Of a stretch of DNA of 64,000 nucleotides, positions 3,702 through 13,832 are shown in pieces. Within the stretch, counting starts at the first letter, position 1. Each line of letters begins with the position of its first letter. The translations under genes and the position numbers were made by a program. The notes below the pieces were generated by a model, which saw only the letters and a program-made list of their open reading frames with translations, did no database searches and had not been told where the DNA came from. Source of the stretch: Basidiobolus meristosporus CBS 931.73 (taxonomy: Eukaryota; Fungi; Basidiobolomycota); contig MCFE01000231.1 of the NCBI GenBank assembly GCA_002104905.1, positions 57,424-121,423 of the forward strand, read 5' to 3'.

Positions 3702-4524
3702 ATGAGTACCTTACTGAAGAGAGTTATACCTAGTTTGCCCAAGAGTGAGGAATTTAGAATCTAAGCTTTGTTATGTAGAATCTTGGCTAAACGATTTTTT
3801 TGTTTGAAGACCCTTTCCCACAGAGTGTTCAAGCATGGGTGCACGAATTTCGAAACAAGAAACCCCTTCGCATTCTCGATCTTCATAAGAGTGTCTTCGG
3901 CTCTCCTCTCCGTGTTGACATTCTGCATCGTGTTGTTGTGTGGCAAAGAGATGCCCTAAGACAGGGTACCCACTCCACCAAGGGAATTAGTGACGTACGT
4001 GGTTCCACCAGAAAAGCCTTTTCGCAAAAAGGAAGAGGTGCTGCCCGTGTGGGCACTATAAGAGCTCCTCAGTTCCGTGGTGGTATGTATCCAGTTTACA
4101 TTGTGGAAAACTCTTCTATAATGCCATTTTTAATCGTTGAATCCCTTCGAAAGGTGCCACTGTACACGGACCCAAGCCTCGTAGCCATGAAACCGCACTT
4201 CAAAAGAAAGTGGTGGATATGGGGCTTCGTGTAGCGTTATCTACAAAGTACGCCCAAAACCAATTGGTAATCGTCAACAGCGTGGAGCTTACTTCCCATA
4301 AGACCCGTGAGCTTGCCCATATACTTAAATCCAATCAATGGACATCCGCATTGATTGCCATCAAGAAGGAAAACGACAACCTTCGCATTGCTGCCAACAA
4401 CATTCCCGGGATCAAGGTTGTTAATGTCGAAGATCTTGATGTTTATAATGTTCTTCTTCATAAGAATCTCATTCTAGACACCGGCTCCGCCAACTATTTG
4501 CAAACCAAATTGATGGTCCAGTGA
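3702..4524 (+). CDS. MRPL4: Mitochondrial ribosomal protein uL4m (Yml6/MRPL4), 3 exons
   Basis: ATG 3702 with a basic presequence-like start; introns ~3745-3809 and from ~4085. Motifs DILHRVVVWQ, RQGTHSTKGISDVRGSTRK, QKGRGAARVG, PQFRGG and HGPKPR. Confidence 0.9.
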
Positions 4525-5758
4525 TCGTTTATCTTCGCAACCTAACGTTTAAGCATGATCCACCATGGACAGAACCTAGAATAGGAGATTATATGCATTC
4601 ATCTATTTGTCAATATCATCCATTAATAAAAGCGTCAACCTTATCTGCCTTTGTGATCTTTAACAGATGTGGGCATCATCCATCACATGGATCCAAGCAA
4701 CACTTCGGGCAGATAGAATGCATCGAGACATCCATTATTTCGAGTGGATCTCAATCCTGCTATGGACAGCACGAATTAGAGTCCAAACGATACACTCTCA
4801 AGAGGGTTTCATTCTTCATGTATGGGGAATTCGCTCTTAGTGATAATGAAACTCCAATGTAGTGCACGGTTCCTTCTGTTCGCTCGTGGCTGATGATGCC
4901 TCTAGAAAACAGCGCTCCCCTACTGCTGCACCTACAAGCTAACACTAACAAGCGATGGCCAAAGCTCCTCGTGTCGCCCCAAGGCTAACCGTTAGGATGT
5001 TTCGCATGAATATCATGTGATCTTCCATTGATTGTGGGTGTTTGAGATTGACTACCACTATTGTGATAATCGGGAGGCACGCCAAGCATACTAAGTGGCA
5101 ATAGGCTTCCTCAGACGTGTCTAACCTGATTTGGCATCGAGGAAAAAGGATTGTGGTGGATCCGGTCTTCAGATCAGTGCGGATGTCATAAGGTATTCAG
5201 TCGTGATTCGAGATATGCTTCCAGTAACAACTATCCTCATCAAAAGCAGGCGCATGACGGTTGGATTCATGCACAATAGATTACAAGCATCACTTGTAGT
5301 AATGTTACTCGACCAAATGCGGTGTGAATTCGACATCATCTCCAAAACATACATCTGTCCAACACATTGTCACCCAAGGTAGTTGGCTCGGCTGCTAGAT
5401 CCCCGTGTTGAAACGATTTTGAGGCGGTCGTGAGGCAATATCGCATTTCGATAGGTGGAGCTCGCTTTTTCAGTGATAGCAATGCTTACACATGGGAATC
5501 AATTAAATGCTCCTATAATTAAGACTGCTGGCTGACTGTGTGACTGTTAAACAAAGCGACGATATGAGATCGGCTGACGCACGCATTATTTTGGCTATAT
5601 CTCTATTCCCTTTCAACATTCTCTTCTCCACGTCCTCTGTTCTTCTCGTCAGAATAGACCATAGAAAGTCTTTTTGGAGAAGAGGATTTGTTGAAGTTGC
5701 ATAGAGTTCACTCTAGTTGTTCACCTTTGGGCGAGATTCAACACTACGTCTAGATATC

Positions 5759-7927
5759 ATGAAGTTCGCTAAGCAACTCGCTCTACGCTCTATTCCCACA
5801 TGGGCCATATATTACATCGACTACAAGCAGTTGAAGAAGTTCATCAAAGATTCCGAACTCATATATGAAGGTACGTTTTGTTTCAATAGGGCGTGTCCTG
5901 CCACTGCCATTTGCTCATTTGTGGCTACGTTGCCTTACCCCCAATAGAAAACAAAGAAACTGCTCAGCTAGACAAGATCACGCAGGAATTCAGAACGCTT
6001 ATTCATACGGAGCTTGACAAGGTGGATGAAAGATACTCGAGTAAAGAGCAAGAGTCAACAGAGAAGCTCAGGCTTTTGAAAACCAAGGTACCCACAGCTT
6101 AGTTGAGCCTTTTGTCTATTGGCTGAACAAACTTTGGCATCCTAGTGGCGGCCAGATTTCTCTCCCGAAAGTCAGAACCAATGGTCGGTGGTGTACCACT
6201 CTCTTATGTTCCGTTCAAATATTCATATGTAACGTTGCCATAAGGTTGAAGGATTTTACAAAGTTGTTACAGTCGCTTGAATATCTCTCAGGTAGATTGC
6301 TGCCCTTGTTTCAGCTCGGAGGATTTCGAGACCATTAATCGCTCGCACATATAGAGTTTACACAGACGAATATCGTTGGGTTTCAGAAAATCCTCAAGAA
6401 ATTCGACAAGCACTTTGGTGTCACTTGGGGAAGGGATTTTTGGCCAGAGATCACCACCAGGAAATTCGCAAACTCTGAGAAAGAGGAAAACCTACTTCAC
6501 GAAGCAAGACAAGTACGTGAAGCAAGATCATACCTATGTTCAGAAACATATGTTAATGATATTTTAGGTTTGGCGTAAGAGGGTTCCTGTTGCTCCACTG
6601 GAGCCGAAGAGAAGCCTTGATGTGGTCAACTCGGTAATCCCCGATGTATCGGCGTTAGATCTCCAATCACTTCCCACTGGACAAGTGCACCGCTTCTGGG
6701 TTGCCCTTTCAGAAGACGGGCTGAACCTCCCCATTAAAGTGCCAGTCATTATCGCAAAGGTATGTCTTTGATCTCCTGAGCCTGCTCCTGCTGGTAAGCT
6801 AATGACTATCACCCAGGGAGTCAAGCCTGGCCCAACCTTGGGAATTACGGCAGCCTTACATGGAAATGAGCTGAACGGGATTCCTTTGATTCATCGCCTA
6901 TTTCGCGAAGTCACGTGCGACGCCTTACATGGTATTATTGTGGCAGTGCCCGTTGCGAATGCGCCCGGTTATCTCAGAAGCCAGAGGACATTCAGCGATG
7001 GAACTGATCTCAATCGGCTGATGCCAGGGTATTGTTTCACACACTAGCCGGCCTGGCAGAAGCTACATCAGCTAATCCCCCGTTGCTAGGAAAAAAAATG
7101 GCTCCACCTCTCAAGTGTATGCATACAATCTAATGGAACGAATCGTCTCGCACTTTGATTACTTGCTAGATCTGCACACGGCTAGCAAAGGGCGAGTCAA
7201 TTCACTGTATGTCCGTGCAAACATGACTGACATTAAGACCCAGCGCATGGCAACCCTCCAAAACCCTCAGGTATGGTTCGTGCCCGTGAGCCAAGCAGCT
7301 CTTCGCCTAACCTGCATGGCTATGACAGATCATTGTTCATAACACCAGTCCAGATGGGTCTCTCCGTGGTGCAGCGATGGAGCGAGGCATTCCAGCCATC
7401 ACCGGTTTGTTAAGCATGGTTGACCCCTCGAGCCTCACCCACCTCTGATGGCAATGTTGAATTTCTAGTCGAGATCGGAGACCCCTCTCGCTTCCAGAAG
7501 CGATTCGTGAAAAATGCGCTCTTGGGCGTCACAAACATCATGTCGCATCTCCAAATGATCGAGGATGAGCCCGATCACCCGGAGTACGATCCAGTAGTAT
7601 GCTCCAAAAGTGTAAGTGCATTCATGTTGAATATCGGCAAGTTAATGAGCAGCTCTGTGACCATCTGGATGGTAGTATTGGATCTTTGCACCCTCGGGAG
7701 GTATTCTGTCCGTTTTGCCCGACGTGAACACTTGGGTGAAGAAGAACGAGCCTATTGCATATCTTCATAACATATTTGGGGATTTGGAGGCTACGTACTA
7801 CGCTCCCGAGGATGGAATTGTCATTGGCAAAAATGTAGATCCCGTTTGTCAATCAGGTAATCGGATTTTGCATCTGGGTGTGGTGGACAGCACCTTCCCT
7901 GAATACGTCAATGATGGGCATTTGTAG
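5759..7927 (+). CDS. SPX domain fused to succinylglutamate desuccinylase/aspartoacylase (M14-like Zn hydrolase), multi-exon
   Basis: N-terminal SPX motifs MKFAKQL..IPTW..YYIDYKQLKKFIK and N.VGFQKILKKFDK. Phase-0 introns 6513-6567 and 6760-6816 join this in frame to GPTLGITAALHGNELNG, DLNRLMPG, LLDLHTASKGRVNSLYVRA, EIGDPSRFQ and the hybrid-type tail YYAPEDGIVIG. Stop TAG 7925-7927. Confidence 0.85.
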
Positions 7928-8234
7928 GGCCTGCTATCTGCTGCCAACTAATTGGTGCCTGGCTCTTGCACTCCCTTGCCACTCTCGTTCATCATATTTG
8001 TTGGTGTACGACTTGCAGTGGCCGCCCTGCGAGATCTAGCATTCCACTATCAAATAAATGGATTTCACTACACTCCGCAGCATAATCATTGTGGGAAATC
8101 GACCACCATCACGTGATACGAGAATGGATAGACAACCATGGAGATGATCAAGTTGAGGACCGCTTGAAAAAAAGATCGGTAAATCCTCTATCTGCAGGAT
8201 CTCGGGGTAATCCGAAAATATCCACCATGTAGGG

Positions 8235-8258
8235 AAAAAAAAGAAAAAAAGAAAAAAA
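8235..8258. promoter_or_regulatory. Poly(dA)-rich tract ~95 bp upstream of the PA2G4 start
   Basis: A8-G-A7-G-A7 seen directly. A nucleosome-excluding promoter role is inference. Confidence 0.4.
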
Positions 8259-8352
8259 TTTGGGAAAAGAAAATGGCATTGAATCAATGTATATTATCTG
8301 GTGGTCGAGTCCAAGAGTCTTACTTGTTCAGTAGCCCCATATTGATACTGCA

Positions 8353-9730
8353 ATGGAAGTCGTACTTCAAAATACTTTGGATAACGTTGAGCTCAACAAA
8401 TACCAAACTGCTGCTGCTATCTGTGACGGTATTGCATAGAAGAACAATATGTCCGTGAATTTCCGCACTAACTAGACGCATTTCTGTCCGATATAGAGGT
8501 CTTGAAGCAGGTTGCTGGTAAGGTTGTCGCCGGTGCTTTGGTCGCTGACCTGTGCCAATTTGGTGATGAGTTGATTCTCTCCTATGTATGTAACGCGTCT
8601 ATTATTCTTTTGCGTGGACCCAAAGTACTAATGCTCCGTCATCTCTTAGACCAACAGTGTCTACAACAAGCAGCGCGTAGAGAAAGGCATTGCCGTCCCT
8701 ACCACCATTGGTGTCAACAACATTGTACAGAATTTCTCCCCCCTTCCTGCTGAGCCCCATACCATCAACGTTGGTGACTTGGTCAAAATGTAACCATGCA
8801 AATATGCTCTGATTTTCCATATCATTTCATACTTATCACGATCTGATCCTAGCGAGTTGGGTGTCCACATCGACGGCTATGTCGCTTCCTCTGCTCATAC
8901 CACCATCGTCAACCCTAACCCCCAGGCCCCAGTTACTGGTAATTTCTCTACGACATAATTGCCTCCTAAATAGATGACTTACACCTTTATTTACAGGCCG
9001 CGCTTCGGATGCTATCTGTGCTGCTTACTTTGGTTTGGAGGCTGCTATGAGAACCTTGAAGGTTGGCAACAAGAACACTGATGTCATGAAGGTTATTTCC
9101 GATGCTGCTGCTGTCTTTGGCTGTAGCCCAGTCGAAGGAACTGTCTCCAGCCAAGTGAAGCGCTTCTTGTTGAACGGAAACAAAACCATCTTAAACTACT
9201 CTGAGGAGCACAACGTTGAGGAATATGTCTTTGAAGAAAACGAGGTTTACACTTTGAATATCTTCATGAGCACTGGCGAGGGCAAAGTGAACGAGTTGGA
9301 GCACAAGCCTACCATTTACCAGCGTGATGTCAACCAAAGCTACAGCCTCAAGTTGAAGGCTGCCCGTGCTCTTTTCAACCATATCAACGAAACCTTCTCT
9401 GTCTTCCCCTTCCCCATCCGTATGGTTGAGGATGCTCGTCTCCGTCTTGGTCTTCAAGAGTGCGTCAACCACCAGTTGTTGACCCCCTACCCCATTTATA
9501 CTGAGAAGAGAGGAGAGTATGTTGCACAATTCAAACTCACCGTTGTGCTAACTCCCAAGGGCCCTCAACGTCTTACCTCACTTCCTGCTCTCCCATACAT
9601 CCACTCTGACTATACTGTGCCCGAGAACTCAGAGCTGAAGCAGATTTTGGCAGCACCCGTTAAATCATACAACCTCCCACCTCTCCCCACCCCCAAGACC
9701 AACGATTCCTCTGCTATGGATATGTCTTAA
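8353..9730 (+). CDS. PA2G4: Proliferation-associated protein 2G4 / Ebp1 / Cdb4 (catalytically inactive M24 family)
   Basis: KYQTAAAI, GIAVPTTIGVNN..QNFSPLP, GDLVK.ELGVHIDGYVASSAHT, YSLKLKAAR, FPFPIR, ECVNHQLLTPYPIYTEK.GEYVAQFKLTV. The exact start codon is uncertain. Confidence 0.9.
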
Positions 9731-10731: not shown

Positions 10732-11169
10732 CTAAGATCTGGGCTTCTCCTTCTTTTCCTTATACAAAGCAAGAAGCGAGACACCAGAAACCTTAACGAC
10801 CTTGAAGCGAACACCAGGGATATCACCAACAGCGCGTCCCTTACGGCCGAAGCCGGAGATAAGGACCTCATCGTTCTCCTCAACAAAGTTCAAACAGCCA
10901 TCGTTGGGAACAAAGGCGGTGATCTTCTTGCCGTTCTTGATGAGCTGAACACGGACACACTTACGAATGGCAGAGTTAGGCTGCTTGGCCTCAACACCGA
11001 TCTTTTCCAGAACAATGCCCTTAGCGTGAGAAGAACCGCCAAAGGGAGAAGACTTGAACGCAGTGCCAAGAGCTCTCTTCTTGTACTGCTTGTCAGCCCA
11101 GCGTTCTTCGCGACGGTGGTTGCGAAGCTTACGGGCAGCTTGGAGACCTCTAGGCTTTCCTTTGCCCAT
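10732..11169 (-). CDS. RPS23: 40S ribosomal protein S23 (uS12), intronless CDS
   Basis: [15 protein letters not shown]...[30 protein letters not shown]...KEKPRS, full length. Confidence 0.98.
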
Positions 11170-11488: not shown

Positions 11489-13832
11489 ATGCTTGGTTAT
11501 CGTCAGCTCTTGCATAAAGGCTTTTGGTCTCGCGCGCCAGTCGCCTTGGCCTCCAAACAGCACCACTCTTATTCTTTGAAGGGTTCCGCTTTTCATTTCA
11601 CCACTCTAGCCGCGACTGCGACGGAGGAAGAGAAGAAGCCCTACTATATAACCACTCCTATTTACTACGTGAATGCTGGTAAGTTTGACGCACTCCTTGG
11701 CCTGGTGGTGCCCAAGTATTGTCCCTAACTTGTCGCCTCGAAGTTCCTCATTTGGGTCACCTCTATACGAGTGTGTTGGCTGATACTATCAAGCGTTATC
11801 AAGAAGTAAAGGGAAACAAGGTCGTCCTGTGCACCGGAACAGACGAGCATGGTCTTAAGGTAAGCTAAGTCTGAATTCCGGAAAATTGAAGTGTTGAGCT
11901 AAATCTTGCCAAGATTCAACAAGCCGCTGCCAAGGACGGCTTGCCACCACAAGAATTTTGTGACAAGGTCTCGGTGAAGTTCAAGGTTTGTTTCTTGCTA
12001 CTATTAAGTTTGCCGCTGTCAAGGATATTCACCAACCAATCATTTTCAACGCTTGACAGGAACTATGCGATGTCTCCAACGTTCAGTACACCGATTTCAT
12101 ACGTACGACCGAGAAACGTCATAAGCTAGCCGTCGCTGAGATCTGGGTACGTATGATCAAGCACGTGTACCGCTTGGAATCATCTCGTAATAATGTTTTG
12201 TTGGGTCTAGAAAACCCTAATGGACAAGGGATTTATTTACAAAGGAAGTCACGAAGGGTGGTATTCAATCTCGGACGAAGCTTTCTATCCCGCTACCCAA
12301 GTCACCGAGAGCGTTGATCCAAAGACTGGCGAAAGTTTTATGGTGGCGTAGTTGCAGTGACCTGTTAATTAAGGTGATCCATGGTTAACCGTGTCGTAGG
12401 TAGCCGCTGAATCAGGGTCCCGTGTGGAATGGACAACTGAGGAGAACTACAAGTTCAAGCTTCCATTGCTACGTGACAAACTTCTGGCGTGGCTGAAAGA
12501 GAATCCAGAGGGTAAATATGGATCCTCGAGCAAAATCCCGCTCATGAAGCTTACGTATTTTCAGTCATTTACCCTAGTTCTCGCCACAACGAGGTTGTTA
12601 CTTGGCTGGAGAATGGTGTGAGTGATCTATCGGTGTCTCGCCCGCGCTCACGCTTAGACTGGGGAATATCTGTGCCTAATGATCCCGAGCACACCATCTA
12701 TGTTTGGCTAGATGCACTCACAAATTATCTAACTGTCACCGGATACCCCTGGACAGGTGATCAAATACCTACGCAAATGAAGCAAGGCGGATACCCTGCT
12801 GATGTCCATATCATCGGAAAAGATATTCTTCGGTAAGCTTCTCACCAACACCGCATTCCGAGTTCCCTTGCTTAGCGCCTTCAACTCCACAGATTCCATG
12901 CCATTTACTGGCCAGCCTTCTTAATGGCGGCCGAGCTTCCGCTACCAAAACGCATCCTATCCCACGCCCATTGGACGATGGGGAAGCAGAAGATGTCCAA
13001 GAGCAGAGGAAATGTGGTCGATCCTACTGAACTGATCCAAAGAGTTGGCCTTGATCCCGTACGCTACTTCTTAATGAGAGACGGTGGAATCACCAACGAT
13101 GGAGGTAATGTCATCCGATATATGCACCCTCCAGATGCATCGGCTGATGCCTTGACTTTAATAGATTACACGGATGAAAACATCATGACCAGGTACAAAA
13201 AAGATTTAGCTGGTCAGCTCGGAAACTTGATGGCGAGAAGCACCTCCAAGACATTGAATATCACCGAAACCATTCCCTCCGTGCAGATTCCCCAGTCGCT
13301 TGAAGAGGTTGATCCTAGAGACCAAGCATTGCACAAAGCATTGATGGAGCTGCCAGGTAGGTTGCACTGGTCTTCTGCGCGAGCTCCCTATTCAGCGTCT
13401 AACTTCATCGTCAGCCCTGTATGAACAAAACCTTGATACATTTGAAACTGGCAGAGGCTTGTCTGCCGTGTTTGAGATGATTGCTGAGGTAAGAGCGTGC
13501 TTGGCGCTGGAGTATCCGAGGGATTCGCTAACATTTTCCGCTCGATGAAATCCTAGGCTAACAAGCATTTTGGCGACAATGCACCCTGGAATCTGGTGAA
13601 GCAGCCATCGGAGAGCGCTCGCCTGCAGACAGTGCTCCGCTACTCATACGAGGCTTTACGTACCGCCGGTATCTTGTTGCAGCCCGTGATGCCAGAAAAG
13701 TCGCAGATCCTGCTGAACAAACTTGCAGTGCCACCCTCCGAGCGTAGCTTCAAGCACTCTTCTCTTGGGATGGGCTGGAAGACCTCAGTTCCCTTGGGAC
13801 CCGATTGTGGCGTGCTTTTCCCCAGATTATAA
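11489..13832 (+). CDS. MSM1: Mitochondrial methionyl-tRNA synthetase, multi-exon
   Basis: Presequence-like N-terminus, then YYITTPIYYVNA|.PHLGH (HIGH), TGTDEHGLK, SVSRPRSRLDWGI, IYVWLDALTNY, HIIGKDILR|FHAIYWPAFLM and KMSKS. Confidence 0.95.

What the first reader, a model, noticed from the sequence alone, without database searches (positions are those of the whole stretch)
5759..7927. SPX sensor fused to an M14-type deacylase: candidate phosphate-regulated enzyme of a type I do not recognise
Seen: one spliced frame runs from a complete SPX domain, with both halves of the basic ligand surface (YKQLKK and KILKKFDK), through a short linker into an AstE/AspA-family hydrolase. The hydrolase keeps its Zn-ligand motifs HGNE and DLH plus a downstream Glu (EIGD). 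Established: SPX domains bind inositol pyrophosphates and regulate fused partners such as Pho81, Vtc2-4, Pho87/90/91, Gde1 and Syg1/XPR1. An amidohydrolase/peptidase partner is not among the architectures I know. Inference: this couples phosphate status to N-acyl-amino-acid, polyglutamate or peptide hydrolysis, linking P and N metabolism.
Basis: partly seen in the sequence, partly recalled or inferred. Interest (0 to 1): 0.85.

Follow-up and report, generated by a model that had tools for sequence, protein, structure and literature searches.

The report
SPX phosphate sensor fused to deacylase
This is a real fungal gene that joins an SPX phosphate-status sensor to a zinc amide-cleaving enzyme; the fusion is conserved in many early-diverging fungi and some protists but has never been studied, and its relatives sit next to an ATP-dependent ligase that probably makes its substrate.

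Summary
Window 5759-7927 (+) holds one gene of 11 exons encoding 516 aa, one mini-exon more than a first hand model. It is 91% identical to Basidiobolus ranarum K7432_002412.

- **Domains:** aa 1-170 form a complete SPX domain that keeps all six ligand-surface residues. A roughly 20-aa flexible linker follows, then an AstE/AspA-type zinc amidohydrolase with all catalytic residues.
- **Not unique:** about 100 of the 120 best database hits carry both Pfam domains. They come from Glomeromycotina, Mortierellomycotina, Kickxellomycotina, Entomophthoromycotina, chytrids, Saitoella, Pneumocystis, Balamuthia and Spongospora. They are named only "SPX domain-containing" or "hypothetical". Seven paper searches found no description.
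- **Not a known enzyme:** the hydrolase is not a DoeB, AstE or ASPA equivalog.
- **New here:** its closest bacterial homologues sit in an operon with a circularly permuted ATP-grasp-like ligase of about 485 aa (52 of 80 loci), often with a GshB/RimK-like ligase as well. The 485-aa ligase gene also lies beside the SPX-deacylase gene in Balamuthia and in one unidentified eukaryote.
- **Best reading:** a hydrolase gated by inositol pyrophosphates that degrades a small amide made by that ligase. Ligand binding, regulation and substrate are inferred, not shown.

The scan noted a second SPX-deacylase copy elsewhere in this genome (s1-216180).

The parts
5759..7927 (+). Whole coding region of the SPX-deacylase gene. 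Eleven exons: 5759-5870, 5948-6087, 6146-6183, 6245-6291, 6355-6512, 6568-6759, 6817-7028, 7090-7270, 7329-7404, 7469-7611, 7676-7927 (stop included). Product 516 aa.
   Evidence: Hand model checked against homologues. It is 90.9% identical over the full length to B. ranarum P0153. Exons are 77% and introns 48% identical to the B. ranarum locus.
5569..5758 (+). 5' untranslated region (minimum extent). It has no upstream ATG and no CACGTG/CACGTT Pho4-type site.
   Evidence: An RNA contig of a relative starts at 5569. Motif scan.
5759..6512 (+). Exons 1-5, encoding the SPX domain (aa 1-165, helices to about aa 171).
   Evidence: Pfam SPX hits on three exons. The AF2 model of the 91%-identical orthologue shows the helical hairpin plus long helices. 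Foldseek TM 0.87 to the XPR1 SPX domain 8TYU.
5822..5839 (+). YKQLKK: Y22 and K26 of the phosphate-binding cluster.
   Evidence: Y22 is kept in 85 of 90 and K26 in 86 of 90 fused proteins. Residue roles are taken from the published SPX structures (my knowledge).
6146..6183 (+). Mini-exon 3 (WRPDFSPESQNQW), easily missed.
   Evidence: Homologues carry the 15-aa segment WRPDxSPExQxxWxK here. The frame closes with GT..AG sites. Reads do not cover it as spliced.
6387..6410 (+). KILKKFDK: K124, K127, K128, K131 (lysine surface cluster plus the third phosphate-binding residue).
   Evidence: Kept in 83, 81, 86 and 79(+5 R) of 90 fused proteins.
6568..6642 (+). End of the last SPX helix (conserved VWRKRVP motif) and the flexible linker (aa 166-190).
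   Evidence: AF2 pLDDT is below 50 at aa 173-179 of the orthologue. The consensus LWRKxxP is conserved in 50 fused proteins.
6643..7611 (+). AstE/AspA catalytic domain (aa about 191-433, exons 6-10).
   Evidence: Pfam PF24827. Foldseek TM 0.82-0.85 to DoeB/EutE 6TWM and 3CDX.
6859..6870 (+). HGNE: zinc ligands H244 and E247.
   Evidence: H in 88 of 90 and E in 89 of 90. It aligns with HGDE of DoeB and 3CDX.
6985..7017 (+). R286 ... DLNR (N295, R296): carboxylate-binding and transition-state residues.
   Evidence: R286 in 90 of 90, N295 in 89 of 90, R296 in 89 of 90. Roles are by analogy with aspartoacylase (my knowledge).
7169..7177 (+). DLH: third zinc ligand H329.
   Evidence: H in 89 of 90.
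7471..7473 (+). E387 of VEIGD: general base.
   Evidence: E in 89 of 90. It aligns with TELG of DoeB.
7676..7927 (+). Exon 11: most of the C-terminal beta domain that caps the active site (aa 434-516).
   Evidence: The AF2 model has strands 429-503. The segment aligns to the C-terminal domain of DoeB to its end.
7928..7982 (+). 3' untranslated region (minimum extent).
   Evidence: An RNA contig of a relative runs to 7982.

Best explanation
The gene encodes a soluble two-module enzyme.

Module 1 (aa 1-170) is an SPX domain. It should bind InsP6 and inositol pyrophosphates on its basic surface (Y22, K26, K128; K124, K127, K131).

Module 2 (aa about 191-516) is a zinc amidohydrolase of the AstE/AspA superfamily. 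Zinc is held by H244, E247 and H329, and E387 is the general base. R286 and N295/R296 hold the free alpha-carboxylate of the leaving amino acid. A C-terminal beta domain caps the pocket, which favours small substrates.

A flexible linker of about 20 residues lets the SPX domain dock on or release the hydrolase (its own or a neighbouring subunit's) according to ligand occupancy. Hydrolysis would then follow cellular phosphate status.

The substrate is most likely a small N-acyl or isopeptide-linked amino acid (gamma-glutamyl, beta-aspartyl or succinyl-like acyl group). It would be made by a circularly permuted ATP-grasp-type ligase that is the conserved gene neighbour of this deacylase family.

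Shown: gene structure, domain identity, residue conservation, wide conservation of the fusion, and the ligase linkage. Inferred: ligand binding, allosteric gating, its direction, and the substrate.
For: - **Gene model and fusion:**. Uninterrupted single ORFs with both domains occur in other eukaryotes: P0243 (587 aa, L015:10001-11764) and P0014 (602 aa). Transcriptome-derived complete ORFs with both Pfam domains also exist (P0249, P0251).
- **Conservation of the architecture:** about 100 of 120 top hits carry PF03105 plus PF24827. The fused proteins form one clade (SH-aLRT 96).
- **Residues:** one search gives 79-90 of 90 for every SPX ligand residue and catalytic residue listed.
- **Purifying selection on both modules against B. 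ranarum:** pN is 0.11 for SPX and 0.02 for the hydrolase, with pS about 0.8.
- **Structure:** pLDDT 90, a disordered linker, TM 0.82-0.85 to DoeB/EutE and 0.87 to the XPR1 SPX domain.
- **Family precedents for small N-acyl or isopeptide substrates among the structural matches:** DoeB, CphZ (beta-Asp-Arg), AstE and aminoacylase 3.
- **Ligase partner in bacteria:** 52 of 80 bacterial loci have the 485-aa gene, mostly directly upstream on the same strand, and 35 have a GshB/RimK-like ATP-grasp gene.
- **Ligase partner in eukaryotes:** the same 485-aa family lies 478 bp downstream of the SPX-deacylase in Balamuthia. It lies divergently about 1.9 kb upstream in an unidentified eukaryote.
- **Ligase fold:** its AF2 model matches circularly permuted ATP-grasp proteins, putative gamma-glutamylcysteine synthetase, glutathione synthase and GspS.
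Against: - There is no biochemical datum for any member. PP-InsP binding and regulation are inferred from residue conservation only.
- Five other eukaryotic loci (B. ranarum, Synchytrium, Calcarisporiella, Fonticula, L013) and this 64-kb window have no ligase gene nearby. I could not test whether this genome encodes the ligase at all.
- The bacterial sister group of the eukaryotic clade is unresolved (support 64 and 26).
- pTM of 0.64 shows that the relative position of the two modules is not predicted.
- RNA contigs of the relative carry three introns unspliced, one of them the intron between the SPX exons and the hydrolase exons. An SPX-only product from intron retention cannot be excluded.
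Confidence: 0.6

Rival explanations
1. It is an eraser of a protein or peptide C-terminal modification. The deacylase would act as a carboxypeptidase that removes residues added by the RimK/TTL-like ATP-grasp ligases, as cytosolic carboxypeptidases do for tubulin, with SPX tying this to phosphate status.
For: The operon partners include a GshB/RimK-like ligase. AlphaFold DB names the eukaryotic homologues of the 485-aa ligase 'tubulin-tyrosine ligase family'. The fold belongs to the M14 carboxypeptidase superfamily (MpaA and carboxypeptidase D matches).
Against: The C-terminal capping domain typical of small-substrate AstE/AspA enzymes is present and aligns to its end with DoeB. The best structural matches are all small-molecule amidases. 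TM to true carboxypeptidases is only about 0.4.
Confidence: 0.15
2. It is an N-alpha-acetyl-2,4-diaminobutyrate deacetylase (DoeB/EutE), as one orthologue (Smittium culicis) is annotated, acting in ectoine-type catabolism.
For: DoeB is the best NCBIfam hit and the best solved-structure match. One marine bacterial homologue (P0054) sits beside a creatinase/M24 gene like DoeA.
Against: Scores are 57-65 bits against an equivalog cut-off of 402.7, with about 21% identity. The nearest bacterial relatives are linked to ATP-grasp ligases, not to DoeA. No ectoine pathway is known in these fungi (my knowledge).
Confidence: 0.05
3. The SPX domain does not gate the enzyme in cis. It acts as a docking or oligomerisation module, or regulates another protein in trans as stand-alone SPX proteins do, and the hydrolase is constitutive or serves as a metabolite-sensing part.
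For: The AF2 model gives no confident interdomain contact (pTM 0.64 with pLDDT 90). RNA contigs of a relative retain the intron after the SPX exons, which would give an SPX-only product.
Against: The fusion has been kept as one clade since before the split of fungal phyla and in protists. The junction motif LWRKxxP is conserved. Catalytic residues are invariant.
Confidence: 0.12
4. It is a gene-model artefact: two adjacent genes (an SPX-only gene and a deacylase) joined by the reader.
For: No read-derived contig covers 6156-6494, and intron 5 (6513-6567) is unspliced in the one contig that crosses it.
Against: That same contig is continuous from the SPX exon into the hydrolase exons. Contig depths are similar (5.9, 5.1 and 4.6). 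Intronless single ORFs and transcriptome ORFs with both domains exist elsewhere. Exon phases close exactly and the junction is conserved.
Confidence: 0.02

Closest known systems
SPX-domain enzymes and transporters of fungi (Vtc2/3/4 polyphosphate polymerase, Pho81, Pho87/90/91, Gde1, Syg1/XPR1)
   Same: An N-terminal SPX domain with the same six basic-surface residues. Sequence hits to Vtc3, Vtc4 and XPR1 SPX structures and TM 0.87 to XPR1 SPX. Like Gde1, it is a soluble hydrolase fused behind SPX.
   Different: The fused partner is an AstE/AspA zinc amidohydrolase, which none of the characterised SPX proteins has. There is no transmembrane, ankyrin, GDPD, VTC or EXS part.
DoeB/EutE, N-alpha-acetyl-L-2,4-diaminobutyrate deacetylase (PDB 6TWL, 6TWM)
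   Same: Best solved-structure match (TM 0.82-0.85 over about 320 residues). It has the same HGxE / DxNR / DxH / E motifs and the same C-terminal domain.
   Different: About 21% identity. NCBIfam score is 57-65 against a cut-off of 402.7. DoeB has no SPX domain and a different gene context.
CphZ, cyanophycin dipeptide (beta-Asp-Arg) hydrolase (PDB 8EIN, 8EIP)
   Same: The same superfamily fold (TM 0.64-0.69). It is a precedent for a member that cleaves an isopeptide made by an ATP-grasp-type synthetase.
   Different: 14-16% identity. No SPX domain. The partner ligase here is not a cyanophycin synthetase (15 bits against a cut-off of 850).
Aspartoacylase (ASPA), aminoacylase 3 and succinylglutamate desuccinylase (AstE)
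   Same: Pfam family PF24827, the zinc site and the catalytic glutamate.
   Different: NCBIfam scores are 20-27 bits against cut-offs of 170-306. TM is only 0.54-0.59.
HutD-AstE/AspA fusion proteins of chytrids and Mucorales (P0033, P0034, P0057/Absidia, P0071, P0137)
   Same: Sister clade of the SPX-fused hydrolases (SH-aLRT 93). The hydrolase domain is 43-51% identical, and they also carry an N-terminal small-molecule-binding module.
   Different: The N-terminal module is HutD (PF05962) rather than SPX. They are equally uncharacterised.

Membership tests
SPX domain (Pfam PF03105) | Profile match above the curated cut-off, at the N-terminus | tested here: met
   Exon 1 alone scores 38 bits (cut-off 27.8). 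Two further exons hit the middle and the end of the profile. The orthologue P0153 and about 100 relatives carry PF03105.
SPX domain (Pfam PF03105) | Helical hairpin plus long-helix bundle fold | tested here: met
   The AF2 model of the 91%-identical orthologue has helices 3-10, 13-18, 22-38, 43-85, 92-134, 138-147 and 156-171. TM is 0.87 to the XPR1 SPX domain 8TYU.
SPX domain (Pfam PF03105) | Basic ligand surface: Y22, K26, K131 plus K127, K130, K134 (Vtc4 numbering) | tested here: met
   Y22, K26, K128 and K124, K127, K131 are present in the window protein and kept in 79-86 of 90 fused proteins.
SPX domain (Pfam PF03105) | Binds InsP6 and inositol pyrophosphates | not testable with these tools
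   Needs ITC or a similar assay on recombinant protein.
AstE/AspA zinc amidohydrolases (Pfam PF24827, M14-like) | Profile match above the cut-off | tested here: met
   55.2 bits (cut-off 25) for the HGNE exon and 24.5 bits for the DLH exon.
AstE/AspA zinc amidohydrolases (Pfam PF24827, M14-like) | Zinc triad H-x-x-E ... H, catalytic Glu, Arg and Asn-Arg carboxylate clamp | tested here: met
   H244, E247, H329, E387, R286, N295 and R296 are kept in 88-90 of 90.
AstE/AspA zinc amidohydrolases (Pfam PF24827, M14-like) | C-terminal beta domain capping the active site | tested here: met
   Strands 429-503 in the model. The alignment to DoeB runs to the C-terminus.
DoeB/EutE equivalog (TIGR02994) | Score at or above the curated equivalog cut-off of 402.7 bits | tested here: not met
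   56.9-64.8 bits for three fungal fused proteins (P0006, P0086, P0153) and 51.7 for Balamuthia P0017.
Succinylglutamate desuccinylase AstE (TIGR03242, NF003706) and aspartoacylase (NF002601) | Score at or above the curated cut-offs (305.65, 170, 180 bits) | tested here: not met
   About 20-27 bits.
CphZ cyanophycin dipeptide hydrolase | Close structural and sequence similarity, and linkage to cyanophycin synthetase or cyanophycinase | tested here: not met
   TM 0.64-0.69 and 14-16% identity. The partner ligases are not cyanophycin synthetase.
Characterised SPX architectures (VTC, Pho81, Pho87/90/91, Gde1, Syg1/XPR1, SPX-RING, SPX-MFS) | The partner domain that defines each class | tested here: not met
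   The only Pfam families found are SPX and AstE_AspA_cat.

The most novel reading that the evidence does not exclude
The SPX-deacylase and the circularly permuted ATP-grasp-type ligase (with or without the GshB/RimK-like ligase) are the two halves of an undescribed make-and-break cycle. The cycle would turn over an unknown small amide metabolite or short storage peptide. It would have been inherited from bacteria by an early eukaryote and placed under inositol-pyrophosphate control in early-diverging fungi, Amoebozoa and Rhizaria. That would be a direct, enzyme-level link between phosphate sensing and nitrogen or amino-acid reserve turnover.
Probability: 0.35. Interest if true: 0.8.

Novelty: new variant of a known kind. 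Interest (0 to 1): 0.62.

Why it matters
SPX domains are the eukaryotic receptors for inositol pyrophosphates. Every output studied so far handles phosphate itself: transport, polyphosphate synthesis, the PHO pathway or glycerophosphodiester breakdown. Here the output would be an amide-bond hydrolase of amino-acid metabolism.

The fusion has been kept since before the fungal phyla split, and it survives in the reduced genome of Pneumocystis. It would therefore be a new class of SPX output and a concrete entry point to phosphorus-nitrogen cross-talk.

The conserved ligase neighbour makes the question testable. Cultured bacteria such as Lewinella cohaerens, Kordia periserrulae and Tenacibaculum species carry the operon and could reveal the metabolite.

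Tried and rejected
- **First gene model:** the 10-exon, 501-aa model was replaced after alignment with homologues revealed the mini-exon.
- **Literature:** seven searches found nothing on this architecture or on the operon. They combined SPX with succinylglutamate desuccinylase, aspartoacylase, AstE_AspA, deacylase, Mortierella and domain architectures, plus COG3608 alone and desuccinylase with ATP-grasp. The single SPX-plus-deacylase hit is a fission-yeast inositol paper that I did not open.
- **Fungal homologues of the 485-aa ligase:** a search with the bacterial protein listed only bacterial proteins, because more than 3,500 hits swamp the top 120. The eukaryotic copies are no closer to each other (48%) than to bacterial ones (about 60%), so a second search would not have helped.
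  - Presence in fungi therefore rests on an ESM Atlas cluster (539 aa, mostly Mucoromycota, TM 0.97).
  - It also rests on AlphaFold DB hits whose organisms were not shown.
- **Ligase genes in this window:** none found.
- **Pfam and NCBIfam on the 485-aa protein:** no hit, even at E = 10.
- **Promoter:** no CACGTG or CACGTT upstream.
- **dN/dS:** could not be computed because synonymous sites are saturated. Only pN and pS are given.
- **Bacterial sister group:** not resolved.
Full report
**1. What is in the sequence**

Reading 5400-8400 and translating in three frames gave a spliced frame on the + strand from the ATG at 5759 to the TAG at 7925-7927. My first model had 10 exons and 501 aa.

Alignment with the closest database proteins showed that they all carry 15 more residues (WRPDxSPExQxxWxK) between two SPX helices. 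The window encodes this segment as a 38-nt mini-exon (6146-6183), followed by an exon that starts at 6245.

The final model has 11 exons and 10 GT..AG introns of 55-77 nt, and encodes 516 aa. It is 90.9% identical over its whole length to Basidiobolus ranarum K7432_002412 (P0153, 517 aa). It is 86% identical to a second, partial B. ranarum protein (P0068, K7432_008318). The window therefore comes from a Basidiobolus-like fungus.

Against the B. ranarum locus, exons are 77% and introns 48% identical. Nonsynonymous differences are 0.11 per site in the SPX part and 0.02 in the hydrolase, while synonymous sites are saturated at about 0.8. Both modules are under purifying selection.

**2. Transcript evidence**

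One public RNA run holds the locus. Its organism is coded and its contigs are 90-95% identical to the window.

Its contigs show introns 1, 6, 8, 9 and 10 removed exactly at my splice sites. They place the 5' end at or before 5569 and the 3' end at or after 7982.

Three introns appear unspliced at contig ends or inside contigs: intron 2 (6088-6145), intron 5 (6513-6567) and intron 7 (7029-7089). Introns 3 and 4 are not covered.

The contig covering 6495-7084 is continuous from the last SPX exon into the hydrolase exons. All three contigs have similar depth. This supports one transcription unit but is not a full-length cDNA.

**3. Domain identity**

| Test | SPX part | Hydrolase part |
|---|---|---|
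| Pfam on single exons | 38 bits for exon 1 (cut-off 27.8), plus hits from two more exons to the middle and the end of the profile | AstE_AspA_cat at 55 bits and 24.5 bits (cut-off 25) |
| PDB by sequence | SPX domains of Vtc3, Vtc4 and XPR1 | DoeB/EutE, 3CDX, 3NA6, 2QJ8 |
| Foldseek on the AF2 model | XPR1 SPX domain, TM 0.87 | DoeB/EutE 6TWM and 3CDX, TM 0.82-0.85; 3NA6, TM 0.81; then CphZ (0.64-0.69), AstE and aminoacylase 3 |

The AlphaFold2 model was made from the orthologue with 50 homologues and has mean pLDDT 90. It shows the SPX helices up to residue 171, a disordered stretch at 173-179, and then the alpha/beta hydrolase with a C-terminal beta domain. Its pTM of 0.64 means that the mutual position of the two modules is not predicted.

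**4. Conservation of the functional residues**

In 90 full-length fused proteins, the SPX phosphate-binding and lysine-cluster positions are kept as follows. Numbering is for the window protein.

| Residue | Kept in (of 90) |
|---|---|
| Y22 | 85 |
| K26 | 86 |
| K124 | 83 |
| K127 | 81 |
| K128 | 86 |
| K131 | 79 (+5 Arg) |

The zinc ligands (H244, E247, H329), the general base (E387) and the carboxylate clamp (R286, N295, R296) are kept in 88-90 of 90. The assignment of roles comes from published SPX and aspartoacylase structures (my knowledge). The junction motif LWRKxxP is also conserved.

**5. How common is the architecture**

A profile-free scan with the HGNE exon found many relatives in which the hydrolase starts 180-560 residues into the protein. 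A word-indexed search with a full-length relative listed 120 proteins, and about 100 of them carry both PF24827 and PF03105. The taxa are:

- Glomeromycotina: Ambispora, Geosiphon, Paraglomus, Entrophospora.
- Mortierellomycotina: many genera.
- Kickxellomycotina.
- Entomophthoromycotina: Basidiobolus, Neoconidiobolus, Massospora.
- Calcarisporiella.
- Chytridiomycota.
- Taphrinomycotina: Saitoella and Pneumocystis.
- Non-fungi: Balamuthia, Spongospora and several unnamed eukaryotes.

No other Dikarya appeared among the 120 listed hits.

Two members are uninterrupted single ORFs (P0243 and P0014). Two come from transcriptomes. The fusion is therefore not an annotation artefact.

All are named "hypothetical" or "SPX domain-containing protein". 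One Smittium protein is auto-named a DABA deacetylase.

In an IQ-TREE analysis the fused hydrolases form one clade (SH-aLRT 96). Its sister clade (93) holds fusions of the same hydrolase to HutD in chytrids and Absidia, plus a stand-alone Rozella protein. The bacterial sister group is unresolved.

**6. What it is not**

Curated NCBIfam models give 52-65 bits for DoeB (cut-off 402.7) and 20-27 bits for AstE and aspartoacylase (cut-offs 170-306). It is a separate subfamily of "predicted deacylase".

**7. A conserved partner**

The closest bacterial homologues are 45-56% identical to the window's hydrolase domain. They lie in an operon with a roughly 485-aa protein that has no Pfam or NCBIfam match, and with a GshB/RimK-like ATP-grasp ligase.

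I examined 80 species-representative genomes from Bacteroidota, Myxococcota, Planctomycetota, Cyanobacteria, Acidobacteriota and others. Several contigs are truncated, so the counts below are lower bounds.

| Gene found within the flank | Loci (of 80) |
|---|---|
| 485-aa gene, mostly directly upstream on the same strand | 52 |
| GshB-like gene | 35 |
| Both | 30 |

The 485-aa protein resembles GshA (PF08886) and circularly permuted ATP-grasp proteins in the ESM Atlas. Its AF2 model (pLDDT 87) matches 3N6X, 3K1T, glutathione synthase, glutathionylspermidine synthetase and YgiC/YjfC. It is very probably an ATP-dependent carboxylate-amine ligase.

The same family is encoded 478 bp downstream of the SPX-deacylase in Balamuthia mandrillaris (37-52% identity, E = 6e-137). 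It is also encoded divergently about 1.9 kb upstream of it in an unidentified eukaryote.

It is not adjacent in B. ranarum, Synchytrium, Calcarisporiella, Fonticula or locus L013, nor anywhere in this window. A eukaryotic cluster of the family, mostly Mucoromycota, exists in the Atlas.

I could not test whether it is the same family.

**8. Interpretation**

- **Firm conclusion:** this is a real, conserved and uncharacterised class of SPX protein whose output module is an intact zinc amidohydrolase.
- **Mechanism:** PP-InsP occupancy of SPX gating hydrolysis through a flexible tether is inferred by analogy with other SPX proteins. The direction of regulation cannot be inferred.
- **Substrate:** a small N-acyl or isopeptide amino acid made by the partner ligase is inferred from three things. 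These are the family precedents (AstE, ASPA, DoeB, CphZ), the capping domain, and the gene linkage.

It overstated rarity and could not see the partner.

**9. Limits**

- No biochemical data exist for any member.
- There is no full-length cDNA.
- Co-occurrence with the ligase in fungi is not established.
- The organism of several hits is masked.

Noticed in passing
P0033, P0034, P0057 (Absidia), P0071, P0137; not in the window: A sister clade fuses the same deacylase to an N-terminal HutD (PF05962) domain in chytrids and Mucorales. This is a second uncharacterised 'sensor-like domain plus deacylase' architecture. HutD is linked to histidine and N-formylglutamate catabolism in Pseudomonas (my knowledge), which hints at an N-acyl-glutamate type substrate.
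   Followed up: partly
L010:4500-5951, L007:4535-5998 and 50 further bacterial loci (L016-L095): A protein family of about 485 aa has no Pfam or NCBIfam model. It is very widespread (more than 3,500 hits) and has a circularly permuted ATP-grasp/GshA-like fold. It sits in a conserved operon with a GshB/RimK-like ligase and the deacylase. The product of this cassette is unknown.
   Followed up: partly
Same genome, other pieces (scan notes s1-216180, s1-199501, s1-243016): The scan lists a second SPX-deacylase copy, which is consistent with the two paralogues seen in B. ranarum. It also lists an SPX fused to an ACT-phosphoserine phosphatase, and an SPX with neutralised lysines. This genome seems rich in unusual SPX proteins.
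   Followed up: no
window 6088-6145, 6513-6567, 7029-7089: Three of the ten introns are unspliced in the RNA contigs of a related organism, while five others are cleanly removed. Retention of 6513-6567 would end the frame soon after the SPX domain. This may be assembly of pre-mRNA at low depth (about 5x) or regulated intron retention.
   Followed up: no
window 3800-4524 (+), 9035-9730 (+), 10732-11169 (-), 12924-13424 (+): By reading the ORF translations, the neighbours look like housekeeping genes: a ribosomal protein L4-like gene, a PA2G4/Ebp1-like (M24-fold) protein, ribosomal protein S23 and a methionyl-tRNA synthetase fragment. There is no metabolic cluster around the SPX-deacylase. These assignments were not checked with tools.
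   Followed up: no
L004:3360-8273 and L005, L006 (marine metagenome contigs): One bacterial homologue (P0054) has a different context. It sits with a LysR regulator, a 476-aa protein without Pfam match, a creatinase/M24 hydrolase (DoeA-like), an aminotransferase and a second AstE/AspA gene. It looks like a catabolic island for an ectoine-like solute.
   Followed up: no
P0246 (Fonticula alba, 771 aa) and P0247: These two proteins nest inside the SPX-fused clade and have a long N-terminal extension (438 aa in Fonticula). Pfam finds no SPX in that extension. It is either a diverged or lost SPX domain or a gene-model problem.
   Followed up: no
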